From contig NC_135668.1 in NCBI RefSeq assembly GCF_964188315.1, positions 55,056,001-55,120,000 of the forward strand: a stretch of 64,000 nt of DNA, given 5' to 3'. Each line of letters begins with the position of its first letter. Within the stretch, counting starts at the first letter, position 1. The notes under the pieces were generated by a model. The model did no database searches and was not told the DNA's origin. It saw only the letters and a program-made list of their open reading frames with translations. The position numbers were made by a program, and so were the translations under genes. Below are positions 45,136 to 64,000 of the stretch, piece after piece. The stretch comes from Podarcis muralis (lineage: Eukaryota).

Positions 45136-45189
<54 letters not shown>

Positions 45190-47776: not shown

Positions 47777-48480
47777 CTAAGGGAAAGACACAGGCGGGTG
47801 TAGTGATCAGGTGGGATTGCTAGGAGGAATTATACAAAATATGGAGCAAGCCATCTGTGTCAGCAATGAAAGCATTGCGTTGACTGGGTTTAAGCCATTT
47901 TTAAATGATTTTTGATCAATCCACGCCTCTGCATCCCTGTCCTATTTCTCTTGCTTGACAAGTCACTTACACAGCCCAGTTGCCAGTTGCTTCGCCAGGC
48001 CATGAAAGATAGTAGGCAGTTCTTTGATGTGCCCTTCCTTGATTTTGTTCATCTCAGGGCCAAGAAATAGTTTTTCACATGAAGGTGATAAAGATCCCTA
48101 TCGTCCTTGCCATCCTTCCTATCATGTTTATTGCTGTTTATGACCTCCGGGGTTGCTGAATGCATCCCTCCTTTTTTGTTCTGTTTTATTTACCCCAGAA
48201 GTATGCATGCTTAATTAGTTTTTGTAGTTTAACTTTGTCCCACATGGGTTTTTTGAAATGCTCAGAGGAAATCTGATTGGTTCTTAAGTACACTGTGTAA
48301 AAAGTTCTTTTGTGAATAAAACGACCTGGGCCGGAGGGTGGACAGGCATTATTATTATACGCACACCTCCCAGAGTCTTGCTGGTCAAGCCTCTGTGTGT
48401 CTTCTATTAAGCAGAGTCTAATCCTTCCTTTGCTTTGGGAATGCCAGAGTGGGGACCCCCCAGGGGTGGAGGGGTGTGAG

Positions 48481-48957
48481 TGTTAGGTTTCTGTTTTGAC
48501 ACACTGCCCAGTGGTGTTCACAGAAAAGGGAAGGATGTTAGATTTCTGTTTTGCCGCTGTGCAGCGCTTGGAGTCACAAGACTCTGTTTACATTCCAGAC
48601 ATTCCAGACTGTTGGAAGTCTCACGGGAGACGGATGTTGATATTACTGGTTTCCTGTTCCTTTGTTCCAGTTGCCTCTCTGCTTTCAGAGAGAGGGGATG
48701 TATATTCTTTTCTGTCTGTCTGTCTTAGCAATGTAGCTCATATTTCTCGTCCTTCTGCTGCTTGGATATGTTAAAACTCTGCTAAGTTATAGAACTTGCT
48801 AGGGCAACTTGGGAAGGATTTTAATAAACAATATATCCTCTCCTGCCTCCCTGAACATTCCCACAATTTCTGTGTTCTCTCTCTGTAAATATTGAATAAA
48901 AGACTTGGTAAGAACTCTTCTTTTTTTAGCTGCTTCCTGGCTGCCACTGTGGGAGGG
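48481..48957 (+). mobile_element. Possible solo LTR
   Basis: Starts TGT, LTR-like composition, internal AATAAA near 48896; boundaries uncertain. Confidence 0.3.
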
Positions 48958-49370
48958 ATCATAGAATCATAGAGTTGGAAGAGACCACAAGGGCCATCGA
49001 GTCCAACCCCCTGCCAAGCAGGAAACACCATCACAGCACTCCTGACATATGGTTGTCAAGCCTCTGCTTAAAGACCTCCAAAGAAGGAGACTCCACCACA
49101 CTCCTTGGCAGCAAATTCCACTGTCGAACAGCTCTTACTGTCAGGAAGTTCTTCCTAATGTTTAGGTGGAATCTTCTTTCTTGTAGTTTGGATCCATTGC
49201 TCCGTGTCCGCTTCTCTGGAGCAGCAGAAAACAACCTTTCTCCCTCCTCTATATGACATCCTTTTATATATTTGAACATGGCTATCATATCACCCCTCAA
49301 CCTCCTCTTCTCCAGGCTAAACATGCCCAGCTCCCTTAGCCGTTCCTCATAAGGCATCGTTTCCAGGCCT
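48958..49370 (-). mobile_element. CR1 LINE 3' fragment
   Basis: PYEERLRELGMFSLEKRRLRGDMI...VESPSLEVFKQRLD plus ATTCTATG-type tail. Confidence 0.92.
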
Positions 49371-49657
49371 TTTGGCTGGCCCTTGTGCTCTATGTGGATC
49401 AGATTCCCTGGAGCCTGACATGCAGTGGCTCCTCTCCCTCTGGAGGTGCTGAGCTGTGGCAGGGCTTTGCTTGCTAGAAGGGGAGGTAACGAGTTGGAAG
49501 GGCCCCCCCCCCACGGTCATCTGGGCCAACCCCCTGCAATGCTGGAAAATCCCTAAAAGGGACAAGCAACCCTAGCAAGAAAGAGCCAAGAGGAGCTGGG
49601 CTCTGGCTGGCAGCCAGGAGGAAGAAGGGTCTGAGGAACTGCAGAGCTTCCTCTCAC

Positions 49658-49774
49658 CTGGCTCGTATACTCCATCACCAGCTCCAGGCTCTGCACCAGG
49701 ATGAATTGTGCCAGCTCCGCCCCATCCAGTCCTAGCTCTTCATCCACCAGGAAGTCTTCCCGGGACTCATCATG
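49658..49774 (-). CDS. PDIA2: PDIA2 exon 5
   Basis: HDESREDFLVDEELGLDGAELAQFILVQSLELVMEYTSQ, 117 nt. Confidence 0.92.
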
Positions 49775-50505
49775 CTGCAAGCGAATGAATGAATGGATTA
49801 ATGAATGAATGAATCTTTCTTTGCATCAGCCATCAGCCATAAAAATAAAGCAAACAAAATTGTGGTATACAGAGGATAAAGGTAAAAAGTCAATTATGTA
49901 AAAAACATTTTGGGGGTTTGGGTCAATGGTCAAATAAGGGATCTTATTCTAATTGCCCCGGTGAAAAACCTTGCAACCTTTGCTGTCACCTGCTCATCTT
50001 GATCTGCCAAGAGAAAGGACACTGTAGCAGTGGTTGGGCAACCCAGAATGGACAATAATAGAAGGATGATAGCCCAGCTACTCACACTGGGTTTTAGAAA
50101 AGTGAACAACTTAATTAGGCAGTGCTTAAAATGATATCGAGCAACAGAATAATCTGGCCACAATAAGGAAATTTTGGGCATGGTATGACTATTTCCCACC
50201 CAGTCGTCTTGACTCTCTGGCACCCTGTTTGCATAACTTAATAATTCAAAAATATAGGCACACTTATACTCTTGCAAGATTGAATATACTGCCTTCAGCT
50301 GTACTTGAGAGATGTTTCCAAAAAATTCCACTCAAGAAACGGTTATGTGACAGAGTCTGTCTGGGCAGATCCAGGGAGCACCATCTAAATCTCAGCAGCT
50401 GCACCAGTCACAGAAAGATACGCCTCCCCTCTAAATGCCCCCCCCCCCCGTCTTTTAACCAACCCTGCTAAGCTCCTGGAAGTGCCCGCCTGGCCCAGCT
50501 CTCAC

Positions 50506-50646
50506 CTTCCGGAAGAGAGAGACGGTGCCAGGGTGGGTCACGTTGAACTTCTCAAAGAGCTCCGAGCAGTTGGTGAGTGCGAAGGCAACGTCCGGAGCAT
50601 CGCTGGCCACATCGTAGAAGAGGCGCACGTCTTCATCCTGCAGGTC
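50506..50646 (-). CDS. PDIA2: PDIA2 exon 4
   Basis: DLQDEDVRLFYDVASD...TVSLFRK, 141 nt. Confidence 0.92.
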
Positions 50647-50999
50647 CTGCAAGGAATGCGTGGCGGCTGAGCCGGGCACAGGATGCCAGGAGCAGCACGC
50701 ACAGGATATCCGAGGCCTGCGCTCCATTTGTGGAGAGGAAAGAGAGTCTCGTTCTGGGAGACCTGCTTCCCCCGGCAGGGCCTTGGGTGCGGGGAAGCTA
50801 CCCTAAGACAGCAACTCCCTGGGGGCTCCCCAGCTGGGGCCCAAATGTCCCCTGGAATGTGCCAGAGGCTGACCCTCACATTTCCTCCCTTTCCCAGCTG
50901 CAGGGAGCAGGCAGCTGGCTGCACCACCAGGAAACAGCAGCTCAGGGGTAGCAGCTTGGCTTGGCTGCAGGAGTGCAGAGGCGCAAGTGGGGCACTCAC

Positions 51000-51133
51000 A
51001 GGGAAGAATCCGACCACCGCCACCATGTTGGCATCCAGGAAAGCAGCCGCCTGGCTGGCATTCTCCAGCAGCACCGCACTGGGCCCAGCTTTCCGTTTCA
51101 GCCACTTCACGATTCCCTCTGCGTCTCGCTGGC
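51000..51133 (-). CDS. PDIA2: PDIA2 exon 3
   Basis: QRDAEGIVKWLKRKAGPSAVLL...VVGFFP, 134 nt. Confidence 0.93.
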
Positions 51134-52085
51134 CTGGCAAACGGGCGGCAAAAGTGTGAGTTGTGGGGCAGCACCACCTGCTTGACCAGGCACTGTGTTA
51201 TGAAGGGAGAGCGGCGAATGGCACCACTCCTCTCGCAGGGGCTCATGGCGGCTGAGGTTCAGATGAGAATAAGCCCCTGATGTGATGCAAATGCAATCCC
51301 GGGAAATCTAGGCGAGGAGCTGCAAGCGAAGAGCTTTCTTGCTCCCTCTGAGGTGAAGCCCTCATGTCAGGGAATGGTCTGGATCTGAAGATTGGGGAAT
51401 GCAGTCTCAGGCAGATCAGCTCCTCTCAAGAGGAAGGGGGATATCCCCCCCCCCCACCAAACTCCAGCATTTCCAGAAGCAGAGAGAGAGAGGCAGAAAC
51501 AAACGTAGAAGCTGAACAGGTTAGGGAGGAGTTACCCAGCTATGAGATAATGACAAGCGATCCGGAAGGGAGCGGTCAGCTGGAAGATACATCAATTGAA
51601 AGTGGGGGAGAGACCCCCCTCCCCTTGGACTCAGAGCTCTGAACGTATCGGAGAACAAAGGAGACTGAGAGGGGGAGGGACTTCCCATTGGCGCACTCCT
51701 TGCTGCAGAAGTTGGAAGTCAGATTCAGAATAGGCAACTGATCTCCTTGCAGAGGGTTGTCTGTGTGTGCAACACGACGTTGTAATAAAGGACTAGAAAT
51801 CTATCAACTGCTCATTAATTCTTATCTGTGAGCTACTGGAGGAAGAGGGGAACTCCCTCGCTTGACACCTCATGCCCAAAGAGCCACAGGATAAGAACCA
51901 AGGGAGACCCCGGCTGCTGCTGGATCAGGCCCATCTAGTCCAGCATCTTGTTCTCAAAGGGGCCAGCCGGATGCTCCCAAAGGGACCCAAGGGCCGCACC
52001 AATGGGTATTCAGAGCCACCCTGCCTCCGACAGGGGAGGTCCAGGGCGGCTGAGAACGCCCCGCAAAACCACTGCCTCTTCTGAC

Positions 52086-52292
52086 CTGTGAAGTCCGCCG
52101 GGTGAGTGCGGTTGCCGTCTCTGAACAGCTTGAGGACGGGGAAGCCGCTGACTCCAAACTCTGCGCTCAGCTCCTTCTCCTGCTCCCCGTCCACCTTGGC
52201 CAGGCGCAGCGCAGAGCCCTCCTCCTTCAGCAGGGCGGCGGCCTTGGCGTACTCCGGGGCCAGGGCCTGGCAGTGACTGCTCCAGGGGGCAT
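52086..52292 (-). CDS. PDIA2: PDIA2 exon 2 (a domain, site WSSHC)
   Basis: [22 protein letters not shown]...LAKVD...[19 protein letters not shown], 207 nt; the GNRTHP motif is typical of PDIA2. Confidence 0.94.
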
Positions 52293-53004
52293 CTGGGAGG
52301 GAAAAGGAGGAGGGGTGAAGCGTCAACCCCACAGGCAACCAAAAGCAGTGCGGAGGTGTGTAAGGACATCTGAGGAGCCTGCTGGATCGGGTCCAGCATC
52401 CTGTTCTCACAGTGGCCAGCCAGAAGCCCCACAGGGAAGCCCACAAGCAAGACCTGGGTGCGAGAGCTACTCTTCCCTCCTGCGCTTTCCAGCAACTGGC
52501 CTTGGGAAGAATTTGCTGTCTCTGAGTGTGGGGCCAGGGCAACCCCACTGTGGTGGTGATGGGGGGGGTGTACATGCACACCAGTGGGTCTCAGGGGCCA
52601 CAGGCACAGCAGGAGAGTGTGGTTCTGTAGGCTGCCCTTCCTCCTGCCCCGTGGGTCTGGCAGGCCATGTTTGCTCTCCCAATAGGCCGCTGATAGCTGC
52701 TTTTGCTTAATCTCATCTCCTTCATCTCTTTTTCGCCTTCCAGCGCATAGAACAGGTTTGCTCCAACAGAAGCAGCTCTGTGGTGCCACAGGAGGACACG
52801 GCTGGGGTGGGGTGGGGGGCTGGAAGGTGAGGCGGGAGCTACAAGAAGGGTAATAATAATATAATGATAATTTTTTTTATATACCCTGCCCTCCCCAGCC
52901 AGGGCCAGGCTCAGGATGGCTAACACCAAATATAAATTACAACAAAACGTAATGGGGGGGAAAGTTAATTAAAATACTGCTTAAAATGCAGTCTCATCTT
53001 AGTA

Positions 53005-53363
53005 AGGTAAAGGTAAAGGTACCCCTGCCTGTACGGGCCAGTCTTGCCAGACTCTAGGGTTGTGCGCTCATCTCACTCTATAGGCCGGGAGCCAGCGCTG
53101 TCCGCAGACACTTCCGGGTCACGTGGCCAGCATGACATCGCTGCTCTGGCGAGCCAGCGCAGCACACGGAACGCCGTTTACCTTCCTGCTGGTAAGCGGT
53201 CCCTATTTATCTACTTGCACCCGGGGTGCTTTCGAACTGCTAGGTTGGCAGGCGCTGGGACCGAACGACAGGAGCGCACCCCGCCGCGGGGATTCGAACT
53301 GCCGACCATGCGATCGGCAAGTCCTAGGCACTGAGGTTTTACCCACAGCGCCACCCGCGTCCC
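53005..53363 (-). mobile_element. Sauria SINE
   Basis: Full length, CpG-rich, 12-bp TSD CTCATCTTAGTA (52993-53004 and 53364-53375). Confidence 0.93.
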
Positions 53364-53470
53364 CTCATCTTAGTAGCAGCCCATAAATCAAGACCATAAA
53401 GGGAGGAAACATCAGATATTCAACCATGCTGGTCCTACATGGGCCAGCAAAAAAGCCAAGGGGGAAATTA

Positions 53471-53723
53471 CTGTATTTTTTGCTCTATAAGACTCACTTT
53501 CTCCCTCCTAAAAAGTAAGGGGAAATGTGTGTGTGCATCTTATGGAGCGAATGCAGGCTGCGCAGCTATCCCAGAAGCCAGAACAGCAAGAGGGATTGCT
53601 GCTTTCGCTGCGCAGAGATCCCTCTTGCTGTTCTGGCTTCTGAGATTCATTTTTTTTGTTTTCCTCCTCCAAAAACTAGGTGCGTCGTGTGGTCTGGTGC
53701 GTCTTATAAAGTGAAAAATACGG
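53471..53723. mobile_element. Tc1/mariner MITE with internal 25-bp perfect hairpin
   Basis: TA|ctgtattttttgctctataagac ... gtcttataaagtgaaaaatacgg|TA; arms 53572-53596 and 53618-53642. Confidence 0.88.
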
Positions 53724-54111
53724 TATGTACCAAATCCCATATAAGGGGTCAGAGTGAGTCTAAGCCCGAAGGCCAGGTGGAACAGCTCCATCTTGCAGGC
53801 CCTGCGGAAAGATGTCAAATCCCGCAGGGCCCTGGTCTCTTGGGACAGAACGTTCCATCAAGTTGGGGCCAGTGCTGAAAAGGCCCTGGCCCTAGTTGAG
53901 AGGGTACCCTTGCCGGAGGGGATGTCCCTTAACAGGGTCCGCTGTGCCCCCTCCCCTAAGCAACCAAGCAGCCACCCTCTGAAGGGGGCGCTCCAGTTTG
54001 CCCCACCTGCCCCCTCCCAGCGCCTGCTGCTTTTTGCCTGGGGGTGCAGGCCAGGGGAGTCCCTGGTGGTGCCCCGTTCAAGCTCTCCCCCCTGCAGCAG
54101 CTGCTACTCAC

Positions 54112-54301
54112 AGAACTCCACCAGGAGCAGCTTGTGCTTCCGCAGGGCTTGGGCAAAGTTGCTCTGGTTGAGCACCAAGACCCCCTGGTCCTCCTCTTCC
54201 TCCTCTTCCTCTGCCTGGTTCCTGCTCTCCTGGGCCCCCAAACGATGCACTAAGGCCACTGCCAGCCCCAGTGCCAGCAGGAGTCTCGGGAGGCAGCCCA
54301 T
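54112..54301 (-). CDS. PDIA2: PDIA2 exon 1 (signal peptide)
   Basis: MGCLPRLLLALGLAVALVHRLGAQ...EEEEEEEDQGVLVLNQSNFAQALRKHKLLLVEF; spliced CDS 1584 nt = 527 aa; tail-to-tail with AXIN1 as in human. Confidence 0.92.
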
Positions 54302-54395
54302 AGCGGCCTGGAGAAGAGAGAGAGGCAGAGTGCCGGAGCCAGGAGATGCCAGGCAGGGAAGGGGGCAGATAAAGCTCCCGGGGCAAGCCTTTCCG

Positions 54396-54425
54396 TGACG
54401 TGGAGCCAGAGTTTGCCCCACGTGG
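54396..54425. promoter_or_regulatory. PDIA2 proximal UPRE/G-box-like motifs
   Basis: TGACGTGG 54396-54403 and CCACGTGG 54418-54425, about 100 nt upstream of the ATG. Confidence 0.45.
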
Positions 54426-55379
54426 CCCTTCCCCACTGGCTGCCCGATAAGAGCTGCTGGGGAGGGGGTGCTGAACCCAAGGCAAACGGCTCTGGAAGCT
54501 CTGCAAACACTATCTTGGAAGTCAAGATAACCCCACAATTAATAGTAGCAATGAATGCATTTATACTCACTTGCTTTGATGTGAGCTAATTGACGGCATC
54601 AGTGCTTTTTTTCTGGGGGTATTCAAGGGGACACAGCACTGGTAGAAAAGCACCCAATCTCCAAGCAGGGCGAGATTGCAGGGGTTCCAGACTGGGGTCC
54701 CTTGGAATGAGGGACAGCAGAGACTGTGGTGTTTTTAGGATCTATGGTTTATTTACACGTCTACAGCCTGAGCCAAAGATGGAGGATCTTGCAGCATCGA
54801 CACCCCAAAAGGCCTTTCTTCTCTCACAGTGACAGCCTTGGAATCGCCCATCAATCAAGCATGGCGCTGTCTCTCTGGCTTCTCAGCCTGCAGCCTCCGC
54901 TCAGCTCTCACCCAGCCAGGCTGGCCATCTTCCTTCCACATCCCAGCCAGGAGAGGCACCCGCAGGTAGTCATTGCCCTGGCAATCCAGCTCCTTATTTT
55001 CGGACGCTGATGGTCCTTGGTGTGAATTTCCCGGACATACCCAGAATACTGCAGTGGGAAGCCCCCCCCCCAAATAATAATAATACAACAACAATAAGAA
55101 ATAGCAGGCCATCTAGAGAAGGCCTCTCCTTGGCCAGACCTCCTGGGCTGCGGTTGTGCTCAGCAACCCAGAGGGGGCTTCCCAGGGAGTGTTGGCCAGA
55201 CCCAAGCAGGAGCAGCGGCCGCACATGGGGGTCTTGTGTGGGGTCCTGCCCAGCTTCCCCTTGATCTTCCTCACTTGGTCCTGGCCGGACGCAGCGCCAT
55301 TCCATGGAATGCCCGCCCTCCTCCAGGCATTGTTTGAATTCCACCCCAACGGCTGCTGCCCACGCAGAGTGGCACTGCC

Positions 55380-55392
55380 ATGGGGCTCAGCG
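55380..55392 (+). CDS. EHMT-like gene, putative first coding exon
   Basis: gccATGG Kozak, upstream in-frame TGA, MGLS + G|gtgagg; phase-compatible with the next exon. Confidence 0.55.
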
Positions 55393-55769
55393 GTGAGGCA
55401 GGTTTGGTGGGGAGGGGTTGGAAATGGGAATCTTGGCACAGAGTGGGGGGCTTATTCTCTGGGCGGGGGGAGCAAAGGAAACTGAGGAACATAGTGAGCG
55501 CCCTCCAAGAAGTGTGTGTGTCTCAATTGCTCACCCCCCAATGTAGGAGCCAACTCCTATTGGCTGAAGTCCCTTTGGCCTCCCCAATAACATGTTTGAG
55601 GGGGCCAGACCCCTCCCCAAAGTTGATTGCCATTCAAATAGTGCACATGCACTGCTTCTTGTGATTGATTATATGGGATGGGGCTTATCCCCACCCCCAT
55701 ATTTTATTCAGCTTTGCACCCCAGCCAGCATCAAGCTAACTGCATGTTGTATTAACCTTTTCCCCACAG

Positions 55770-55813
55770 AGAGTAGAGGTTTGGGGCCTGGCGAAGCCCC
55801 CTCTGAAAGACAG
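55770..55813 (+). CDS. EHMT-like gene exon 2
   Basis: ttttccccacag| ... CAG|gtaagg, 44 nt, ESRGLGPGEAPSERQ. Confidence 0.65.
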
Positions 55814-56136
55814 GTAAGGAATGCTTCTGGGCAGAGACCCCCTTGGGGTGCTTGCTGACGTACCTGATGGGGGGACTGGCTTCTTTCCTCCCTCCCTCCC
55901 TCCCCACATTGCTGAGCAAGAGGGGAGCCTCCATCTCCCTGACCCTTGGCCGTCTGCTCCATTGCCCAGCAAAGCAGATTCTCCAGGTCTCTGGCCTTGA
56001 CCCTCTGTGAGGAGGAGAAGGGGGTCCCGCAGACTCCCTTGGGCTGGGCCACTCTCAGCCAGGACGACCCGTTTGTGGGGAGGGCCAGGGCAGGGGGGCA
56101 GAGGCTGCTTGGAGGCCAGTTGCTTCCTGCCTGCAG

Positions 56137-56256
56137 GTGGACGAGGAGGATGAGGCGGTGGCCGCAGACCCCCTTTTGCACATGGAGGCCAGGAAGGGCC
56201 ACTGTGACACAGCCCGCCAGCTCCTTGCCCAGGACCCAGAGGCCCTCAACAGCCAG
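56137..56256 (+). CDS. EHMT-like gene exon 3 (ankyrin repeat)
   Basis: VDEEDEAVAADPLLHMEARKGHCDTARQLLAQDPEALNSQ|gtaggc. Confidence 0.8.
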
Positions 56257-56453
56257 GTAGGCCAGCCAGCGGCGGCAGAGGATGGCTTGGAGGGCCCCCT
56301 GCCCCACAGGCTGTGGTGGACCCCCTTCCCTTGGTGGGAGGGCTGGGATGTGCCTGCGATGGGGGGAGATGACTCCTTGCCCCCCTCCAAGGCCCCTCAC
56401 CTGGACAAGGCCCACCCCACAGCTGTTCTCTTGGCTTCCCCCTCACTCTCCAG

Positions 56454-56558
56454 GACGCCAGTGGCCGGACGCCCCTTTTCTGGGCCACGGAGTACAGACA
56501 CGAGAGCCTGGTGGAGCTCCTGCTGGCCCACGGAGCAGACCCAGCTGTGCGGGATCAC
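56454..56558 (+). CDS. EHMT-like gene exon 4 (ankyrin repeat)
   Basis: DASGRTPLFWATEYRHESLVELLLAHGADPAVRDH, aligns with GLP DDGGWTPMIWATEYKH. Confidence 0.88.
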
Positions 56559-56829
56559 GTGAGGAATTCGCCCTCCGATTGCGCTGCGAGGCTGGATCCC
56601 TGGGGGGGGGGGGAAGAATGAATTGGGGTGGGGGTATTCACTCCCTATTGCCCACCCAGACAGAAGACCAGTTGGGAGCAGTGATGGACCTGCAATTTGG
56701 GGCCCCTGAAGCTTAATATGTTATGGAAGCCCCTTCGCAACCTGTTAGAAGGTCTGTTAGAAGGGAGGGGGGCATAGCAGGGCAGCCAACTTTCCCCTTC
56801 CTTCCTCCCTTACAACATCTGTGCTACTT

Positions 56830-57300
56830 ACTCTATTTTTTATATTTTTAAATTAATTTTCAACATTACTTTCAACAATAATTAAACATATTTTGAACAT
56901 CTTATATATTTAAATTTTTTTGGACTTCCATCAATCTCATCTGGAAATTTTCCAACCTAATCACTAAATATACATTTCTCACTTCTGCAATTACTTTTGA
57001 CTCATAACTAACATCACTATTCTTTCTCTAATCTGCAATGCTTCATACATTTCTCCTTACAAAACTTCTTGTGGTCCTACTAGCGTAATTTGTTGATTAC
57101 AGTTGCTCTTCAAATAATTCATATACTTCTTCCAATCTGCTGTAAATCTCTGGTCCCGCAGGTTTCGAATCCTTCCTGTCATTTTATCTAATTCTGCATA
57201 ATCCATTAATTTTGTCTGCCAGTCTTCTTTCGTCGGAACTGTGCTCCTTACTCTCAAACTTTGTGTGGGTTGATATATACACAACAAAATATTAATCAAT
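56830..57300 (-). mobile_element. L1/Tx1-type LINE 3' fragment
   Basis: PTKEDWQTKLMDYAELDKMTGRIRN...VL* followed by an A/T-rich 3' UTR. Confidence 0.65.
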
Positions 57301-58161
57301 TTGAGTCAAAGCAATTGGCCTCCATCATGTGGCTCAAATGGGGTCCCCCAAATTAAGCCATGTGGACTAAAGTGGCTTCTGGGGCCCCTCCGGCCCAGAA
57401 GCTGAAGCTTTGTTCCTTTCTTAGTAGATCTGCCCCAGTTGGTAGGAAGAGGGCAGAGCTGAGCGGGGAATCTCCAAAGTGGGCTGGGCTGCCAGTGTGG
57501 ACAAGCAGCTCTCACAGGCACACATTCCCTGCTGGCATACTGCCACGCGATGCCACGGCACTGGCAGGGGTGGAGGAAGGAGTGGGGGTGGGCCGCCCCT
57601 GGTGTCACCACTGAAGGGGGTGACAAAAAGCCAGGTGGCACTCACCCAAATGGTCCGCCCGCTGCCTCTCCCTCAGCTGTAGGGCGGCTAAGAGGAGGCA
57701 GGCAGACTCCTTGGAGGCCCCGTGGAGCGTACTGCCCCAGCTGGCCCCGCTCCTGGGCACATGGCAGGCGTGCCTCCCCAGTCGCTTGATCGGCTTGCTC
57801 TGCCCCTGGGCACTGGAGGGGGTGGGCTCTGCCAGCCAGCGAGGAAGCTGGAGGCACCTTGTGGGGCTGACCAAGGAGAGGCTGTGTGTGACTGTGTCTT
57901 GCAACCAGAGGCAGGCAGGGAGGCTGCAAGGGAGGGCTGCTGCTCACTTGTGCCAGGCGCAGGTCCTCCTACCTGGAGGATCCTGGGGGCAGCAGGCCGT
58001 GGGGGCCTTGGGGTGCACAGACTGCTCCCCTGTGGAGAAAGGCAGCAAGCCTTGCAGAGTCACACAACCCCTCGAGGGTGGCCTGGGAGGTGCTTGGCCG
58101 AGGGCTCCCCCAGCTCAGCTCACCCCATTCTCTCTGCTGCCCACCCCCCTTCCCTCCTTAG

Positions 58162-58316
58162 GAAGGGAACCTCTGTCTGCACTGGGCGGTATATGTCGGC
58201 AGCCCCTCCATCGCCAGAATGCTGCTGGATGCCGGCTCCGATGTGGATGCGCTGAATGGCCAAGGCGACTCTCCCCTGCACCTGGCGGCCCAGGAGAGGC
58301 GCTACGAATGTCTCGT
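58162..58316 (+). CDS. EHMT-like gene exon 5 (ankyrin repeats)
   Basis: EGNLCLHWAVYVGSPSIARMLL...GDSPLHLAAQERRYECLV, aligns with G9a EENICLHWA...GDTPLHIAARE. Confidence 0.9.
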
Positions 58317-59408
58317 GTGAGTGCCGCCCACCCATGTGGGAATGTTGTGGACAGTGGGAGAGGATATATTAATTAAATATTATCCTTCCTCACTCATGCT
58401 AGTACATTCCCCTGTGTATTGCAAGAAGCTTGTAGATTCATTAGAATCTCTTGAGTTAAGCAATCCAGTCTGGCTTCTCCAGATTGGGTTTGTTCCTGCT
58501 AAATTCCCTTTTAATTCCCTCTTAAAAAGAATAAAGACACAACAGTCTTCTCTTAAAAGTAAGAAGTTTACTTACATTCAGTTCACAGTATGATCCTGAA
58601 GGCAGCCTTTAGCTTGTAGTTACAGAAGAGAGTGTGAGTTTATCCCATATGGGGATTGAGCCCATGCGCTGCTGGCTGAGAGCCAGCAGACAGCAAAAGA
58701 CATCAAGAGAGCAGCATCAAGAGAAGCGTCAAGAGAGAGGGAGAGGGAAGATGGCTGCATGAACAGTCCTTTTACGGGGTCTCCCAGGGTCACGCCCATC
58801 TACCTGGTCACACGCAGGGGGAGGATGCTCCAGAAAGGTGTGACAGGAAGTCCTCCTGGCACTGGAGTAACACCCCCTTGTGTGTCCACTCTGGGCAAAC
58901 AGGAAATGTTGTATTTGACTGCTACATCCCACAGCCCAGTGGCCCCAGCCAGGCCCAGAGCTTGGCTGCGGAGGAGAAGCAGCCATCGCCCAGAAGCTCC
59001 CTTGCGCCCTTGGCAAGGAGATGAGAGGTCAGCACCCGCCTCTCCCTTGGCCTGGCTGTGCAGGGTGGGATAGTCAAAGAGCAGTATAGGCCAGACGCCC
59101 ACTCTTTGCTAGGCTGGCACATGAGAGGCGCTGAAGCTCTAGTCTGCCAGAGAGGACTCTGCAGTGAGAGATGCTCCCGCTGTGCCCTGAGAGCGAGGGG
59201 GCCCAGCTCTGTATCTCCTCCAACCTGCCTGGGCTCATCCTCTCTTCTTCGTCACTTTCCACCCAGCCAACTGTGAGAGCATCTGCCTTAAAGCAGCCGG
59301 GATTCCTCCATCAAAAAGGCTCAAACCAGCTTCCCTTTGAAGCTGCAAAGGAATGACACCCTGCTGAACTCACAAACCTGAGGAAGGAAGGATAATATCT
59401 AGCAAATA

Positions 59409-59845
59409 CCGTATTGGCCCGAATATAAGCCGCACCTTTAAAATTGGGGGGGGGGGGGAGAGAAAGACAATACCTGAATATAACCCGCTCCCTTAAAATT
59501 CTGCAGGCACTCACACCTGTAAATGGCAGATGTAGAATAAAATCCTGTGGGTACTAGAGAGGACCCGCCAGTGGGTTAAACACTTGTTCATAGCACCGTA
59601 AATGCAAATAAAAAACCAATACTGCACTGTAAAATTCGGGGAAAGCTATGAATGACATTAGAATTGATTGCACAACAGTCTCAAGCTTGCAAATCGGCAA
59701 GAAAACATTTTGACCGCATGTCTGTTTCAGCAGCTATATCGTAAAAGTCAATCTTTGTAAGGTCGCGAATTTAAGCCGCACTTATAACTTTTCACGGTTG
59801 GAATTTGGCAAAAAGAAAGTGCATCTTATATTCAGGCCAATACCG
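59409..59845. mobile_element. Tc1/mariner MITE
   Basis: TA|ccgtattggcccgaatataag ... cttatattcaggccaataccg|TA. Confidence 0.8.
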
Positions 59846-60222
59846 TATATCCTCTCCCAGCATCTATTCTTACCCCAACAGAGAGCAAGCTCCTAGCCAC
59901 TCTGAGCCAGATGGGAAGGATGTGGGGGTCAACCTAACTGACCCCCAGGGAGTCAGGAGTTGCAACGGGAGAGGAGGGAGGTCTGGGGGGAAGCCTGGCT
60001 AGAGGAGAAGGCAGCAGGAAGCTTCCACTGGGAGGGGGGCTGTTTGAGTGGATGGAGAGCAAAGGAAACCGCCCCCCAGAGGTTCTCCCCGGGGCTCCTC
60101 TCTGGGTAGGTGGGGCTGCCACAGCCCTTCTTAGTCCTTCCTTGGTGCTCCAGCTTCTGACTGGAGGACCTGGGGGCTCCCCCCCCCCAGGGTGCTCAGC
60201 TGCCCCTCTTTGCGTCCCACAG

Positions 60223-60372
60223 CTTGCTTCTCGCCCACGGCGCCAAAGTCTCCCTGAAGAACAGAGCCGGCCAAGTGGCTCTGCAGTGCTGCAAGCCCAG
60301 CTCCCCTTCCTGGCGGGCCCTGGAGGCCGCCTCTGCGCGGCCCCCCCACCCGACGGAGAGGCTCCTCTGCAG
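60223..60372 (+). CDS. EHMT-like gene exon 6
   Basis: LLLAHGAKVSLKNRAGQVAL...TERLLCR, 150 nt. Confidence 0.88.
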
Positions 60373-60471
60373 GTGAGCGGCACCCGGGGGCGGCTGGGCT
60401 AAGGCGGGAGGGACCCCCTCCCTCCAACCGGGCTGCAGCTGTGGCTCAACGGCCGCTCTTGTCGTCCCCAG

Positions 60472-60619
60472 AGACATCTCCCGGGGCTTTGAGCAAGTCC
60501 CCATCCCTTGCGTCAACGGGGTGGACGAGGAGCCGGCGCCCGGAGCCTTCCTCTACGTCACGCAGAACTTTGTGTCGGACTCTGCGGTGCTTCCAGCGAC
60601 GGGCTGGGGCAGAAGTCAG
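60472..60619 (+). CDS. EHMT-like gene exon 7 (pre-SET N-flank)
   Basis: [23 protein letters not shown], aligns with G9a [23 protein letters not shown]. Confidence 0.92.
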
Positions 60620-61201
60620 GTGAGGGGCATTGTCCACCCACTCCTCTTCCGTGCTCCAGGGTGAGTCGGAGGGGCTGAAGTTGCTGGGTGGGCAGGGAAG
60701 CCCCACCATCCATCCAGACGCCCCACAACTCTGGGGCGTCTTCTGAGCAGCCCTCCAAACCAGAGACATTTCATAGGGCTGCGTTTCGACCATTCAGGCC
60801 TCCTTGTGCTGTTTGAAGGCATCCTCTGCCAACCTGGCGCCCTCCCAAACCCAACAAATAGCATGTTTTGGAAGACCCGGGGCTGACAGGGTCTGTCCTC
60901 AGAAACCCTTGGAGGGCGCCAGGTTGTCGAATGGTGCAGAGAAGTGATGCTGCTCCTGTTGACGTTGTTTCCGGCACCTGGAGCCTTGAGGGTACCCAAA
61001 CCAGGTGGCTTGAGAAGGAAGGATCTGGCGGGCCTCTGCCAGGGCTGGCTCCCTGTAGAGGACCGCCGAAGCAAAATAGTAATAAAAATAAATAATAACG
61101 AATTAGGCGTCTGCCAAGCTGTGGCTGCAGAGTGCCCTCTGGGGGCCTTGTAGGGGCCTGAGCGTGACCCCGAATCGCCTGACCGCCTTGCCTTCTTTCA
61201 G

Positions 61202-61279
61202 CACTGCGAGTGCGCCAGTTCCTGCTCTGCGCCCACCTGCCCGTGTGTCGAGCGCAGCCTGCGCTCCTGGTACACTCCG
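61202..61279 (+). CDS. EHMT-like gene exon 8 (pre-SET)
   Basis: HCECASSCSAPTCPCVERSLRSWYTP. Confidence 0.9.
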
Positions 61280-61373
61280 GTGAGAGCCGCTCCCGCCCTT
61301 CCTGGGGCCAGGCGGGGAGGTCAGCCGGAGCCACTGAGGGCCAGCCGGCCGTTTCTCTCCTCTTGTGGTCCAG

Positions 61374-61495
61374 GATGGCCGGCTGGCGCCAGACGCGGCC
61401 GGCAGCAGAGCCGAGGCGGGCCCCATCTACGAGTGCCACATGCTTTGCTCCTGCGCCAGCTCCTGCCCCAACCGGGTGGCGCAGAGGGGCCTCAG
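61374..61495 (+). CDS. EHMT-like gene exon 9 (pre-SET)
   Basis: DGRL...IYECHMLCSCASSCPNRVAQRGLR. Confidence 0.92.
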
Positions 61496-62521
61496 GTGAG
61501 CCCCCTTTCCCTGGGCCAGGGGCCTGCGGGCTCCCCGGTAAGTTCACCGACTTAATATATAGAGCTGCCCCACAGCAGAAGTACTTTAGGAAGGCAGTGG
61601 GGTGTAGTGGTGAGAGTGTCAGACCCTGGGAGATGAGGGTTCGAATCCCCACTCTGTCATGAAGTTCACTGGGTCAGTCACAGCCTCTTAGCCGACCTCA
61701 CAGGGTCGTTGTAGGGATCAAATGAGGAGGGGGATGAACCGTGGACTCCTTGGAGAAGAAGGTGGGAGACAAATGGAACAGATAAACACTTCTGCTGACC
61801 TGCTTAAGGAAGCTGGAGGGGCCAGCCAGGTGGGCATGTCTGTCACCAGCCCAGAGATCTCCGTGTGGTCGCAGTTGGCACCCGCGCCAGTTGTGAAATG
61901 CGCTTGGTGCCTGGGGAATTTCGAAGGCTGGGTGGGAGCACCCACCAGCCTGGGTCAGATGCCTTGGCACCCTCTTCCTTTGCCCCCTGGCCAAATGGCA
62001 CACGATGGTGTCAACGGCCTCTCCTTCTGAGGACGTTCTTAAGCAGAGCTTGGATGGCCGCCCATCAGGGGTGAATTGGTTTGGACTCCCGCATGGCAGG
62101 GGGTTGGACTAGATGACCCCTGGTGTCCCCCCCAACCTTGCCATTCTGTGATTCTACGAGCAGCCCCTTTCCAGATTCCTGCTTCCCGTGAGGGGACCCT
62201 TTGTTCTTTTCCATTAAGGAGACGGCGCTTTGCGCGTTCAAACGCTGCCACTTTCACAGGGGCAGAAATACTTGCCGCAGCCCTGCGAGAGAAGCAAAGG
62301 AGGGAATCGAAGCCCACCCCCCCTCGCCACTTGGCTCTCCCTCCGTGCCAGCCCACCCAAGTCGCCCCCTTAGAAAAACAACCCCGCTTGCCACCCCGCC
62401 CTTGGGACTCTTGCTTGCCTGCTTCTCTTCTCGCCCCGCAACCCCCCTCGCCCCTCTGGTGCCCAGTGGGGGTCCCGCTTTCCGCTGCCCGAGGTGGGCC
62501 CCAGCACCCTCTCATCCGCAG

Positions 62522-62608
62522 GACGCAGCTGCAGCTGTACCGGGTGCCAGGCAAGGGCTGGGCAGTGCGCACGATGCAGGAGGTGCCCCGAGGAGCCTTC
62601 CTTTGCCA
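62522..62608 (+). CDS. EHMT-like gene exon 10 (SET)
   Basis: TQLQLYRVPGKGWAVRTMQEVPRGAFLCQ. Confidence 0.92.
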
Positions 62609-62700
62609 GTAAGTCCCGGCGGGGGGGAGAAGAGAGGGGCTGAGTCCAGGCAATTCCCCTCCCCCCAAAAAAACCCTCATGGCCCTTTCCTCCCCGCCAG

Positions 62701-62779
62701 GTACTTTGGGGAGCTGATTTCCAGCGCCGAGGCTGCCCAGCGAGAGGACGCCGCCTATTCCTTTGTGGTGGACATGCAG
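62701..62779 (+). CDS. EHMT-like gene exon 11 (I-SET)
   Basis: YFGELISSAEAAQREDAAYSFVVDMQ. Confidence 0.92.
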
Positions 62780-62876
62780 GTGACATTTCCGCCTCCACTT
62801 GGGGGGCGGGAGGGGTTTGTGCCCCCTTCCTGGGGGGCGGGCACTGGAGCTCAGCGTTGCCCCCCTCTCCCCGCAG

Positions 62877-63043
62877 GCGGGCCCCGAGTGCTGCCTGGAC
62901 GGGCGCTTCTACGGCAGCGTGGGCCGCTTCCTGAACCATTCGTGCCAGCCCAACCTGGTGGCTCTGCCGGTGGTCGTGGGGCACGAGATCCCCGGCATCG
63001 CCTTCTTCAGCGCCCGGGCCATCCAGGCGGGCGAAGAGCTGGC
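62877..63043 (+). CDS. EHMT-like gene exon 12 (SET)
   Basis: CLDGRFYGSVGRFLNHSCQPNL...IAFFSARAIQAGEEL. Confidence 0.93.
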
Positions 63044-63512
63044 GTAGGTGGTGCTGCTGGAGAGAAAGGGGGCTGCCGTGGGGTGAAGGGGCCCCCACCT
63101 CCATGCCTGCCCCCTGGACTTGCAACCAGCCAGGAGGCGGGGGGCTTCTCGGACTTCAGTCTCAGGTTTGCCCTTGCAAGACTCAGCCGGGAGGAGGCGC
63201 TGCTTGGAGCCAAGCCACTTGGCGCTGCCCGTCATTAGCTCTGGCGCCACCTGCTGGTGACCTCCCGGGGGCTTCAGCCACTCCCGAATGGGCGCCTGGC
63301 AACCGCAAGAGACGTGACTCTCCGCTCCTGCTATCCCCCGCCCTTGAACAGAGCAGCACTTTGGCTGCAGCAAATGGGGTGGCGAGAGCCGGTCCCGGAG
63401 TGTCCTCTGATCTCCTGCCGGATTGGGGGCGGCGGGAGGGGCCCAGTTTGCCCCCGGCGACGAGGGGAGCGGGCGCCCCGTCTTCACTCGGCGGCGTTTC
63501 TGCCCCTCGCAG

Positions 63513-63768
63513 GTTCGATTACGGCGAGCGCTTCTGGGAGGCGAAGGGCCGCCGCTGGGCTTGCTTGTGCAAGTCGCCCGGCTGCAGATACCGGCCGTCG
63601 AGGGAAGGGCCAACGGCAGACGACGCTGCCGCCGCCGCAGGAGACCCCGGCCTGGGCACTTCCACGTCCTACCCGCTACGCGGCTTCTCGCGCAAATCCG
63701 CGCGGAGCAGCCCGCTGAAGACGGCCCCGCGCCGCTCCGCGCGGTCCCGACGGCGCCCCCTGCGCTAG
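63513..63768 (+). CDS. EHMT-like gene last exon (post-SET and basic tail)
   Basis: FDYGERFWEAKGRRWACLCKSPGC...RRPLR*; spliced CDS 1524 nt = 507 aa. Confidence 0.9.
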
Positions 63769-63801
63769 CCCGCGGCCCCAGCTCCTGTCTTGATCCCTCC
63801 C

Positions 63802-63807
63802 AATAAA
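63802..63807 (+). terminator. EHMT-like gene polyadenylation signal
   Basis: AATAAA 34 nt after the TAG. Confidence 0.75.
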
Positions 63808-64000
63808 GAGCCGAAGCCAGCCGCCTGTCTCGGGCCTGATTGCTGCGTCGGGGGCCGGGTTCCGTAGGGCGAGGTGGAAGAGGGAGCGGAGGCTCCTTCG
63901 AACAGAAGGCGCTTGGAACGAGCTTTCTGCAAATGCGGCCCCGAAGTGCAAATAAGGGGCCAGGAAGGATGGCGACGGCGACCCAAGACGGGAACCCTTC

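What the first reader, a model, noticed from the sequence alone, without database searches (positions are those of the whole stretch)
55380..63807. Compact third EHMT (G9a/GLP)-family gene: about 4-5 ankyrins plus pre-SET/SET/post-SET in 507 aa
Seen: 13 phase-consistent exons, no stops, and a polyA signal. All nine pre-SET Cys, RFLNHSC, the EELxFDYG motif (F switch, catalytic Tyr) and post-SET CxCxxxxC are retained. Exon boundaries fall at the positions I recall for EHMT1/2, so it arose by DNA-level duplication. Established: EHMT1 and EHMT2 are over 1200 aa with long N-termini and seven ankyrins, and neither lies beside AXIN1/PDIA2 in human. Inference: a divergent paralog lacking the N-terminal half, absent from or lost in mammals, and probably uncharacterised even if auto-annotated as EHMT-like.
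Basis: partly seen in the sequence, partly recalled or inferred. Interest (0 to 1): 0.85.

Follow-up and report, generated by a model that had tools for sequence, protein, structure and literature searches.

The report
Short lizard-and-snake copy of EHMT1
This is a real, expressed and conserved gene found only in lizards and snakes: a half-length copy of the chromatin enzyme EHMT1 (GLP) that keeps its catalytic core, has a rebuilt substrate groove, and has gained a lipid-anchor-type start, so it probably methylates something other than histone H3 lysine 9.

Summary
A 13-exon gene (55380-63768, + strand, all introns GT..AG) encodes 507 aa with four to five ankyrin repeats plus pre-SET/SET/post-SET. 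The window is Podarcis muralis; RefSeq already calls the gene "EHMT1-like".

- **Distribution:** 460-590 aa orthologs sit in the same slot (AXIN1-PDIA2-gene-RGS11-FAM234A) in geckos, skinks, lacertids, amphisbaenians, iguanians, varanids and snakes. None was found outside squamates.
- **Origin:** Ten introns match EHMT1 exons 16-26 in position and phase, so it arose by partial DNA-level duplication. Trees place it inside the EHMT1 lineage. AU tests reject a grouping with EHMT2 and a position outside EHMT1+EHMT2. The date of origin is unresolved.
- **Function retained:** It is spliced as modelled in RNA of a related species and is under purifying selection (dN/dS 0.14-0.25). All zinc cysteines, the NH motif and the catalytic tyrosines are invariant.
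- **Function changed:** The residues that hold H3 Arg8/Lys9 (D1074, D1078, L1086, D1088) and cage tryptophan W839 are replaced family-wide.
- **New parts:** A conserved MGL(S/N)xS(K/R) N-myristoylation-type start and a conserved basic C-terminal motif.

Most likely it is an active lysine methyltransferase with new specificity and localisation. I found no paper on it.

The parts
54301..55379 (.). Intergenic region shared head-to-head with PDIA2; it presumably holds the promoter and is not a CpG island.
   Evidence: The PDIA2 initiator ATG lies on the minus strand at 54301 (signal peptide plus the first thioredoxin exon). CpG observed/expected is 0.33-0.35. PDIA2(-)/gene(+) has the same arrangement in Lacerta, Rhineura, Pituophis and P. 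lilfordi.
55380..55392 (+). Exon 1. It is 13 nt long and encodes MGLS plus one base. It carries a good Kozak context (GCCATGG) and the start of an N-myristoylation-type motif.
   Evidence: There is no in-frame ATG upstream, and an in-frame stop lies at 55335. The same mini-exon, ATGGGNCTNARYG followed by GTRAGG, is present upstream of the annotated starts in Lacerta, Rhineura, Eublepharis, Pituophis and P. lilfordi. Annotated proteins from Podarcis, Hemicordylus, Paroedura, Gekko, Tiliqua and Pantherophis start with MGL(S/N)xS(K/R).
55770..55813 (+). Exon 2. It is 44 nt long and encodes ESRGLGPGEAPSERQ. This coding exon has no counterpart in EHMT1.
   Evidence: AG/GT borders and phase were checked. 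An identical exon is present in P. lilfordi. It can be reconstructed in Lacerta and Eublepharis. It has no EHMT1 counterpart in the alignment.
56137..56256 (+). Exon 3 encodes ankyrin repeat 4 of EHMT1. The first 18 nt are new.
   Evidence: The donor sits at the same column and phase as the EHMT1 exon ending at codon 846.
56454..56558 (+). Exon 4 encodes ankyrin repeat 5. It carries the altered methyl-lysine cage: R64 at 56466-56468 replaces W839, while W69 and E72 are kept.
   Evidence: It is 105 nt long, the same as the EHMT1 exon. W839 is R in 14 of 15 squamate orthologs and W in 9 of 9 canonical EHMTs. The cage residues are defined in PMC4255711.
58162..58316 (+). Exon 5 encodes ankyrin repeats 6-7, including W102 (equivalent to W877) and D130 (equivalent to D905).
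   Evidence: It is 155 nt long, the same as the EHMT1 exon. The junction 58316>60223 is present in RNA contig record 1 of run X1.
60223..60372 (+). Exon 6 encodes the end of the ankyrin domain and the linker.
   Evidence: Spliced junctions are seen on both sides in run X1. Column and phase match EHMT1.
60472..60619 (+). Exon 7 encodes the N-SET segment (DISRGFEQVPIPCVNGVD...).
   Evidence: The PDB search gives EHMT1 at E = 8e-10 and EHMT2 at 1e-8. The junctions are present in run X1.
61202..61279 (+). Exon 8 encodes the first five pre-SET zinc cysteines.
   Evidence: The cysteines are invariant in 15 of 15 squamate orthologs. The junctions are present in run X1.
61374..61495 (+). Exon 9 encodes the last four pre-SET cysteines.
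   Evidence: The cysteines are invariant in 17 of 17 orthologs. The junctions are present in run X1.
62522..62608 (+). Exon 10 encodes the start of the SET domain. The GWG(V) loop reads GWAV in lacertids.
   Evidence: It is 87 nt long, the same as the EHMT1 exon. The G-to-A change is shared by the three Podarcis species and Lacerta.
62701..62779 (+). Exon 11 encodes the rebuilt substrate groove. Y342 (equivalent to G9a Y1067) is kept. D1074 is S, D1078 is A, D1083 is A, L1086 is S and D1088 is V.
   Evidence: See the site table. The roles of these residues in G9a are described in PMC7948220.
62877..63043 (+). Exon 12 encodes the SET core, including RFLNHSCQPN and a 3-residue deletion relative to EHMT1.
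   Evidence: The PDB search gives EHMT1 at 56.5 bits, EHMT2 at 49.1 and SETMAR at 43.9. N, H and C are invariant.
63513..63768 (+). Exon 13 encodes FDYG (F/Y-switch Phe and catalytic Tyr), the post-SET CxCxxxxC, a 52-residue basic tail (63610-63765, net charge +9) and the TAG stop. The tail carries the conserved motif PLRGF..K..R..PLK (63673-63765).
   Evidence: The junction 63043>63513 is present in run X1.
63802..63807 (+). AATAAA polyadenylation signal.
   Evidence: Located. An RNA contig of run X5 ends at 63818, whereas the related species' contig runs further.

Best explanation
**What is shown.** The gene is a functional partial duplicate of EHMT1 (GLP) found across squamates. A genomic copy of the last eleven EHMT1 exons (ankyrin repeats 4-8, pre-SET, SET, post-SET) sits between PDIA2 and RGS11. 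It has two new 5' mini-exons. It has been kept in that slot from geckos to snakes, is transcribed and correctly spliced, and evolves under purifying selection.

**What is inferred.**
1. The protein is still a SAM-dependent lysine methyltransferase. Every zinc ligand, the NH motif, Y1067, F1152 and Y1154 are invariant.
2. It no longer works like G9a/GLP on H3K9. It lacks the N-terminal half with the Cys-rich recruitment region. The acidic groove residues that hold H3 Arg8/Lys9 are replaced by neutral or aromatic residues in every ortholog. The first tryptophan of the H3K9me1/2-reading cage is Arg in every ortholog.
3. The conserved start MGL(S/N)xS(K/R) fits the N-myristoylation consensus. Together with the conserved basic C-terminal motif, this suggests a new localisation (membrane-associated or otherwise non-canonical) and new, possibly non-histone, substrates.
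For: **Gene model.** The model is established. P0476 is 100% identical to residues 35-507 and P0474 is 98% identical over all 507 residues.

**Orthologs and synteny.** Orthologs occur in at least 20 squamate species. Synteny is conserved in Lacerta, Rhineura, Eublepharis, Pituophis and P. lilfordi.

**Origin.** Introns 3-12 are identical in column and phase to EHMT1 exons 16-26. The squamate clade sits inside EHMT1 (100/99*) and with tetrapod EHMT1 (97/95* and 96/89*). AU tests reject a grouping with EHMT2 (p = 0.0018) and a position outside EHMT1+EHMT2 (p = 0.0025).

**Expression.** All junctions from exon 5 to exon 13 are present in RNA contigs at depth about 17.

**Constraint.** dN/dS is 0.14 against P. 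lilfordi (28 synonymous, 12 non-synonymous changes), 0.14 against Lacerta and 0.25 against Rhineura. For the SET domain it is 0.07-0.13.

**Residues.** Catalytic and zinc residues are invariant. D1074, D1078, L1086, D1088 and W839 are replaced family-wide. Their roles are described in PMC7948220 and PMC4255711.

**New terminal motifs.** The MGLS mini-exon is conserved at DNA level in five loci and in annotated proteins. The C-terminal motif is conserved.

**Fold.** In the AlphaFold2 model the ankyrin region has pLDDT about 90. The SET region matches GLP structures at target TM-score 0.8 and 49% identity.
Against: - No activity, substrate, lipid modification or localisation was measured. Points 1-3 above are inferences from sequence.
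- Lacertids carry GWAV instead of the otherwise invariant GWGV loop, and they have also lost D1083. Either change could weaken catalysis in this particular lineage.
- In the window's own species the RNA evidence is weak. Run X5 shows only low-depth, partly unspliced pieces and an alternative donor in intron 12 that would bring in a stop. Two deep 2026 RNA runs show no exon cover. The newest RefSeq annotation splits the gene into two truncated products.
- In Sceloporus and Lerista the annotated ORF starts upstream of the MG, which would prevent myristoylation if those starts are used.
- The N-SET/linker part of the model has low confidence.
Confidence: 0.72

Rival explanations
1. This is an old paralog rather than a squamate invention. 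The duplication of EHMT1 happened before the amniote (or even tetrapod) crown group, and the copy was later lost in amphibians, mammals, turtles, crocodilians and birds, surviving only in squamates.
For: The ML tree puts the squamate clade outside a tetrapod EHMT1 clade that includes a salamander (94/90). At two or three columns where tetrapod or amniote EHMT1 share a derived Ser, the squamate proteins keep the ancestral Ala. Forcing the clade to group with sauropsid or amniote EHMT1 costs 16.7 or 4.2 log-likelihood units, with p-AU 0.058 and 0.052.
Against: Support falls to 78/75, effectively a polytomy, once the other long branch (Colius) is removed. The Colius copies, seen in one bird species only, are pulled to the same basal position, which suggests long-branch attraction. 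The squamate stem is 0.8-0.9 substitutions per site against 0.03 or less for amniote EHMT1. The gene is GC-rich and Ala-rich, so Ser-to-Ala reversal is easy. No ortholog outside squamates appeared in the searches. This scenario needs at least four independent losses. No squamate canonical EHMT1 and no tuatara sequence were in the tree.
Confidence: 0.3
2. The protein is mainly a non-catalytic regulator. It pairs through its SET domain with canonical G9a or GLP, as those two do with each other, and diverts or damps them, so its own catalysis is irrelevant.
For: G9a and GLP act as a SET-mediated heterodimer (established knowledge). Lacertids carry a change in the GWG loop.
Against: Residues needed only for chemistry are invariant across about 200 million years in all orthologs: the NH motif, Y1067, the F1152 switch, Y1154 and the post-SET zinc site that closes the cofactor pocket. 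A pure scaffold would not need these. The SET domain has the lowest dN/dS.
Confidence: 0.15
3. It is a decaying duplicate or an annotation artefact, that is, a truncated model of the canonical EHMT1.
For: Protein divergence among squamates is high (55-75% identity). The newest P. muralis annotation is split. RNA evidence in the window's own species is weak and partly unspliced.
Against: The frame is intact with identical exon structure in six species. dN/dS is 0.14-0.25. Synteny is conserved, away from the canonical EHMT1 locus. Spliced transcripts exist. PDIA2 starts 1078 bp upstream on the other strand, so no upstream EHMT exons can belong to the gene.
Confidence: 0.03

Closest known systems
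EHMT1 / GLP (KMT1D)
   Same: It is the closest relative by sequence (46-48% identity over ANK-SET), by tree, by structure (target TM-score 0.8) and by gene structure (ten shared introns). The pre-SET/SET/post-SET chemistry residues are the same.
   Different: It is 507 aa instead of about 1300 aa. It has no disordered N-terminus and no Cys-rich region; Pfam PF21533 is absent. It keeps only ankyrin repeats 4-8. Cage residue W839 is Arg. Groove residues D1074, D1078, L1086 and D1088 are replaced, and there is a 3-residue deletion in the SET domain. It has a new MGLSES start and a new basic C-terminal tail. It lies at a different locus and evolves many times faster.
EHMT2 / G9a (KMT1C)
   Same: It has the same domain family and fold, at 41-45% identity.
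   Different: It is more distant than EHMT1 in every exon tested. A grouping with EHMT2 is rejected (p-AU 0.0018).
SETMAR and SUV39H1/2 (other pre-SET/SET/post-SET enzymes)
   Same: They share the class of SET enzymes with a nine-Cys pre-SET cluster. They are the next best hits after EHMT1/2.
   Different: They have no ankyrin repeats and only 35-40% identity in the SET domain. The N-SET exon is EHMT-specific.
Colius striatus 'EHMT1-like' copies
   Same: This is another lineage-restricted, fast-evolving set of short EHMT1-derived genes.
   Different: They have pre-SET and SET only, with no ankyrin repeats. They occur in several copies, partly in tandem, at another locus in one bird species. 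They appear to be a separate event.
N-myristoylated signalling proteins (Src-family kinases, MARCKS, G-alpha-i)
   Same: They share a start of the form Met-Gly-x-x-x-Ser-Lys/Arg, which fits PROSITE PS00008 (established knowledge). The motif is conserved across the family.
   Different: There is no homology. The resemblance is a short motif only, and the modification was not tested.

Membership tests
EHMT (G9a/GLP) subfamily of SET methyltransferases | A pre-SET nine-Cys cluster, a SET domain with NHxC and catalytic Tyr, and a post-SET CxCx4C. | tested here: met
   Pfam Pre-SET scores 65 bits and SET scores 75 bits. All of these residues are present and invariant in orthologs.
EHMT (G9a/GLP) subfamily of SET methyltransferases | An ankyrin repeat domain directly N-terminal to the SET module. 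| tested here: met
   Pfam Ank families match residues 33-136. The region aligns colinearly with EHMT1 repeats 4-8. Only about half of the eight repeats are kept.
EHMT (G9a/GLP) subfamily of SET methyltransferases | Descent from the EHMT lineage, shown by phylogeny and gene structure. | tested here: met
   The clade sits inside vertebrate EHMT1 at 100/99*. AU tests were run. Ten introns are shared in position and phase.
EHMT (G9a/GLP) subfamily of SET methyltransferases | A long N-terminal half with the Cys-rich region (CRR, PF21533) used for recruitment. | tested here: not met
   The protein starts 32 residues before ankyrin repeat 4. PF21533 is listed for canonical EHMTs but not for any squamate short protein. 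PDIA2 begins 1078 bp upstream.
EHMT (G9a/GLP) subfamily of SET methyltransferases | The H3K9me1/2-reading cage in the ankyrin domain (W839, W844, E847, W877). | tested here: not met
   W839 is Arg in all orthologs. W844 and E847 are kept. W877 is Arg in snakes and Sceloporus. The cage is defined in PMC4255711.
EHMT (G9a/GLP) subfamily of SET methyltransferases | The acidic substrate groove that holds H3 Arg8/Lys9 (D1074, D1078, D1083, L1086, D1088). | tested here: not met
   D1074, D1078, L1086 and D1088 are replaced in every ortholog. D1083 is also lost in lacertids. Their roles are described in PMC7948220.
EHMT (G9a/GLP) subfamily of SET methyltransferases | H3K9 mono- and dimethylation activity, and heterodimerisation with the partner EHMT. 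| not testable with these tools
   This needs enzyme assays and co-immunoprecipitation.
N-myristoylated proteins | An initiator Met followed by Gly2, a small or uncharged residue at position 3, Ser/Thr at position 6 and no Pro at position 7. | tested here: met
   The starts are MGLSESR in Podarcis, MGLSESK, MGLSASK, MGLSGSR and MGLNESK. The first in-frame ATG has a Kozak context.
N-myristoylated proteins | Actual co-translational attachment of myristate by N-myristoyltransferase. | not testable with these tools
   This needs metabolic labelling or mass spectrometry.

The most novel reading that the evidence does not exclude
Squamates may possess a membrane-anchored (N-myristoylated), non-chromatin lysine methyltransferase derived from GLP. 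Its substrate groove would have been re-specified away from the Arg-Lys motif of histone H3. Its conserved basic C-terminal motif (PLRGF-A-L/R-K-S-K-R) could be an internal substrate, pseudo-substrate or targeting signal. If so, this is a new enzyme-substrate system unique to lizards and snakes.
Probability: 0.3. Interest if true: 0.8.

Novelty: new variant of a known kind. Interest (0 to 1): 0.62.

Why it matters
G9a and GLP are among the best-studied chromatin writers, and vertebrates are taken to have just these two. This gene is a third, clade-restricted relative, apparently dating back to the last common ancestor of living squamates. It keeps the chemistry but discards the recruitment half, alters the methyl-lysine reader and rebuilds the peptide groove.

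That makes it a natural experiment in how SET-domain specificity is re-written. If the lipid-anchor motif is used, it would also be a rare case of a histone methyltransferase relative redeployed outside chromatin.

It also shows that 'EHMT1-like' and 'EHMT2-like' labels in reptile annotations hide a distinct gene family. That family needs its own name so it is not mistaken for EHMT1 or EHMT2 in comparative or expression studies.

Tried and rejected
- **SETMAR-rooted tree.** The root fell inside the squamate clade, which is a long-branch artefact. I re-rooted on invertebrate EHMTs.
- **Searching with a single exon.** A spliced protein cannot be given to the tools by reference. One exon therefore seeded the representative search, and stored orthologs were used from there on.
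- **Locus look-ups.** P0474 (P. raffonei) and P0389 (ostrich EHMT1) are not on record in the look-up of encoding contigs. I used P. lilfordi and Mesitornis instead.
- **First splice mapper.** The tblastn-based mapper missed short exons. I replaced it with exact k-mer chaining.
- **Canonical squamate EHMT1/EHMT2 and tuatara sequences.** The scan's own notes hold nothing on EHMT1/2 elsewhere in this genome.
- **Collins et al. 2008.** The paper is not held. The cage residues were taken from PMC4255711 instead.
- **Deep 2026 RNA runs X15 and X16.** They gave no exon coverage, so no tissue profile could be derived.
- **Exon 2 regular expression.** It did not find exon 2 in Rhineura or Pituophis, although exon 1 is there.
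- **Ideas considered and dropped:**
  - A 2R ohnolog origin was dropped because the AU test rejects a position outside EHMT1+EHMT2.
  - A retrogene origin was dropped because ten ancestral introns are kept.

Full report
**Observation.** I rebuilt the gene model from the raw sequence. Thirteen exons between 55380 and 63768 on the + strand join in frame through canonical AG/GT borders. They give a 1524-nt CDS and a 507-aa protein ending in TAG at 63766-63768. AATAAA follows at 63802-63807. The nine pre-SET cysteines, RFLNHSC, EELAFDYG and the post-SET CxCxxxxC are all present. Single exons already hit solved structures of human EHMT1: exon 12 at 56.5 bits (E = 1e-14) and exon 7 at 41.4 bits. EHMT2 comes second, then SETMAR and SUV39H2.

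**Which genome, and is it already annotated?** An exon-12 search of 1.8 billion representative proteins returned a 524-aa skink protein that aligns over the whole model. Searching from that protein found 460-590 aa proteins with Ank + Pre-SET + SET in many squamates. They are labelled "EHMT1-like", sometimes "EHMT2-like", or hypothetical. The genera are:
- Lacertoidea: Podarcis, Lacerta, Rhineura.
- Gekkota: Eublepharis, Gekko, Paroedura, Sphaerodactylus.
- Scincoidea: Tiliqua, Lerista, Hemicordylus.
- Iguania and Anguimorpha: Sceloporus, Varanus.
- Snakes: Pituophis, Pantherophis, Ahaetulla, Crotalus, Vipera, Protobothrops, Ophiophagus.

The Podarcis muralis entry XP_028561118.1 (P0476, 473 aa) is 100% identical to residues 35-507 of my model. 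The P. raffonei isoform X3 (P0474, 507 aa) is colinear at 98% identity, including the N-terminus. Pfam on these stored proteins gives Ank, Pre-SET and SET above the curated thresholds, and no EHMT Cys-rich region. The only non-squamate short relatives found were several Colius striatus (a bird) genes with pre-SET and SET only. I found no paper on the squamate gene.

**Neighbourhood.** PDIA2 lies on the minus strand. Its initiator ATG is at 54301, which is 1078 bp from the ATG at 55380. The interval is not a CpG island. In Lacerta, Rhineura, Pituophis and P. lilfordi the order is PDIA2(-), this gene(+), RGS11(+). In the snake and the gecko AXIN1 lies further upstream, and in the snake FAM234A follows RGS11. 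In human this slot holds ARHGDIG (my own knowledge). The gene is therefore fixed at one locus from geckos to snakes, so it was present in the squamate ancestor. No upstream EHMT exons can belong to it. Tiliqua and Hemicordylus carry a second copy between RGS11 and FAM234A.

**Origin.** I mapped a bird EHMT1 protein exactly onto its 63-kb gene (Mesitornis, L006), which has 26 coding exons. Introns 3-12 of the lizard gene fall in the same alignment columns with the same phases as the introns between EHMT1 exons 16 and 26. Exon sizes also match closely: 105, 155, 87 and 79 nt are identical, and the others differ by one to six codons. Exons 1 and 2 and the first 18 nt of exon 3 have no EHMT1 counterpart. 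This is a partial DNA-level duplication, not a retrocopy.

The trees give a consistent answer on lineage.
- With SETMAR as outgroup the root is drawn into the fast squamate clade, which is an artefact.
- Rooted on invertebrate EHMTs, the tree is (EHMT2, (teleost EHMT1, (tetrapod EHMT1, squamate short clade))).
- Support is 100/99* for membership in EHMT1, and 97/95* (96/89* without Colius) for grouping with tetrapod EHMT1.
- AU tests reject a grouping with EHMT2 (p = 0.0018) and a position outside all canonical vertebrate EHMT1+EHMT2 (p = 0.0025).

The date of the duplication is not resolved. The free tree puts the clade just outside tetrapod EHMT1 (94/90, falling to 78/75 without Colius). Forcing it to group with amniote or sauropsid EHMT1 gives p-AU 0.052 and 0.058. 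Two or three Ala/Ser columns favour an early split. However, the stem is 0.8-0.9 substitutions per site, the gene is GC-rich and Ala-rich, and the bird-restricted Colius clade is pulled to the same place. I rate a squamate or lepidosaur-stem origin at about 0.6 and an older origin with multiple losses at about 0.3.

**Is it alive?** I laid four RNA runs on 57860-63859.
- Run X1 is from a closely related species (95-99% alike). It holds two assembled transcripts at depth about 17 that contain every predicted junction from exon 5 to exon 13. One of them extends 311 nt upstream of exon 5, which matches exons 1-4 (282 nt) plus a short 5' UTR.
- Run X5, under the species label shared by the best holders of this stretch (probably the window's own species), shows only low-depth pieces. 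These include an unspliced intron 8, a contig ending at 63818 just after the AATAAA, and an alternative donor near 63163 that would bring in a stop.
- Two deep 2026 RNA runs show nothing on the exons.

Expression is therefore real but restricted or low, and I could not identify the tissue.

I extracted exact CDSs from five other species; all have the same exon structure. Nei-Gojobori dN/dS values are:
- 0.14 against P. lilfordi (28 synonymous, 12 non-synonymous differences).
- 0.14 against Lacerta.
- 0.25 against Rhineura.
- 0.07-0.13 for the SET domain, 0.09-0.17 for the ankyrin region and 0.2-0.4 for the pre-SET region.

The gene is under purifying selection, although it evolves far faster than EHMT1.

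**What has been kept and what has changed (alignment).** The following are invariant in all 12-17 squamate orthologs that cover each site:
- the nine pre-SET cysteines;
- the NH motif and the SET Cys that completes the post-SET zinc site;
- the three post-SET cysteines;
- Y1067 and the catalytic Y1154 (human G9a numbering).

The F/Y-switch residue F1152 is Phe in 13 of 14 (Leu in Sphaerodactylus).

The following are replaced in all orthologs, although invariant in canonical EHMTs from cnidarians to mammals:
- D1074 becomes S, N or another residue.
- D1078 becomes A, G or another residue.
- L1086 becomes Y in most orthologs and S in Podarcis.
- D1088 becomes V or R.
- D1083 is kept in most orthologs but is Ala in lacertids.

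In G9a these acidic residues complement Arg8 and Lys9 of the H3 substrate (PMC7948220). In the ankyrin domain the cage residue W839 is Arg in every ortholog. W844 and E847 are kept, and W877 is lost in snakes and Sceloporus. The cage residues are defined in PMC4255711. Lacertids also carry GWAV in place of GWGV.

An AlphaFold2 model built on 34 sequences has mean pLDDT 70. The ankyrin part is at about 90, the SET part at 65-88, and the linker/N-SET and the tail are low. Its best Foldseek matches are GLP SET structures at target TM-score about 0.8 and 49% identity, followed by G9a.

**New parts.**
- *N-terminus.* The start MGLSESR/K is shared by Podarcis, Hemicordylus and Paroedura. Close variants occur in Gekko (MGLSASK), Tiliqua (MGLSGSR), Pantherophis (MGLNESK), Sceloporus (MGASGSK, internal to a longer annotated ORF) and Lerista (MGQGGSK, likewise internal).
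- *Exon 1 at DNA level.* The 13-nt exon ATGGGNCTNARYG followed by GTRAGG is present upstream of the annotated starts in Lacerta, Rhineura, Eublepharis and Pituophis, as well as in P. lilfordi. Exon 2 can be added in Lacerta and Eublepharis. In the window it is the first in-frame ATG and has a GCCATGG Kozak context. The motif fits the N-myristoylation consensus, PROSITE PS00008 (established knowledge). The modification itself is only inferred.
- *C-terminus.* Beyond the post-SET region there is a tail that I could not align reliably with EHMT1's C-terminus and that runs further. It has net charge +9 in Podarcis. It carries a motif conserved from geckos to snakes, roughly PLRGF-A-L-K-S-K-R-x-x-P-L-K-x-V-T-R-S, which reads PLRGFSRKSARSSPLK in Podarcis. 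Its role is open: nuclear targeting, a membrane-binding basic patch, or an internal substrate or pseudo-substrate lysine.

**Most likely mechanism.** Shown: this is a conserved, expressed, constrained, EHMT1-derived half-gene. Inferred: it is an active SAM-dependent lysine methyltransferase that no longer recognises the Arg-Lys context of H3K9. It no longer reads H3K9me1/2 in the canonical way and lacks the recruitment half of GLP. It is probably sent to a new place by an N-terminal lipid anchor, the basic tail, or both. A scaffold or decoy role through SET-SET pairing with G9a/GLP is the main functional rival. The perfect conservation of residues needed only for chemistry argues against it. 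Pseudogene and annotation-artefact readings are contradicted.

**Comparison with known families and verdict.** By descent, fold and chemistry it belongs to the EHMT branch of pre-SET/SET/post-SET enzymes. It fails three features that define how G9a and GLP work: the Cys-rich N-terminal half, the intact methyl-lysine cage and the acidic H3 groove. It is best described as a new, squamate-wide variant (subfamily) of a known kind. It is auto-annotated but, as far as the held literature shows, unstudied.

Noticed in passing
window 44150-54301 (minus strand): PDIA2 lies head-to-head with the EHMT1-like gene, and the two start codons are only 1078 bp apart. The shared interval is not a CpG island (observed/expected 0.33).
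   Followed up: partly
window 62087-62130 and 59406-59452 (introns 9 and 5): Short dispersed repeats show very high depth in RNA contigs of all runs (up to 2600), with loose ends on both sides. This is repeat signal from elsewhere in the genome, not expression of this gene.
   Followed up: no
window 60620-60664 and 63044-63047: Retaining intron 7 adds 14 codons and then a stop. Retaining intron 12 gives a stop straight after exon 12 (GCG TAG). The newest P. muralis RefSeq entries (P0473, 225 aa; P0472, 209 aa) are exactly these two truncated forms. P0472 also has an alternative start inside intron 7.
   Followed up: partly
window 63163-63512: Run X5 shows a low-depth (2.5) alternative donor about 120 nt into intron 12, joined to the normal exon 13 acceptor. 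This transcript would contain the in-frame stop at 63045.
   Followed up: no
window 61338-61373; L001 29843-29878: The last 36 nt of intron 8 are open in frame (GPAGRFSPLVVQ). The Lacerta agilis annotation uses this upstream acceptor, giving a 12-residue insert in the pre-SET region. It is either an alternative acceptor or an annotation slip.
   Followed up: no
L008 10001-14892 (Tiliqua); L009 10001-18273 (Hemicordylus): Scincoid lizards carry a second copy of the short gene between RGS11 and FAM234A, in addition to a separately annotated copy on the same chromosome-scale record, whose position I did not fetch. In the tree the two Tiliqua copies are each other's closest relatives, which suggests gene conversion or repeated duplication.
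   Followed up: partly
L005 10001-30774 and 38379-40774 (Colius striatus): The speckled mousebird has several fast-evolving 'EHMT1-like' genes with pre-SET and SET but no ankyrin repeats. Two lie in tandem and others are on other contigs. This appears to be an independent lineage-specific expansion of EHMT1-derived genes.
   Followed up: partly
L001 12810-28784 (Lacerta agilis): The intron equivalent to intron 5 is 16 kb in Lacerta and 1.9 kb in Podarcis, so there has been a large lineage-specific insertion.
   Followed up: no
L003 (Eublepharis): No PDIA2 gene is called between AXIN1 and the EHMT1-like gene in the gecko locus, although it is present in lacertids, Rhineura and snakes.
   Followed up: no
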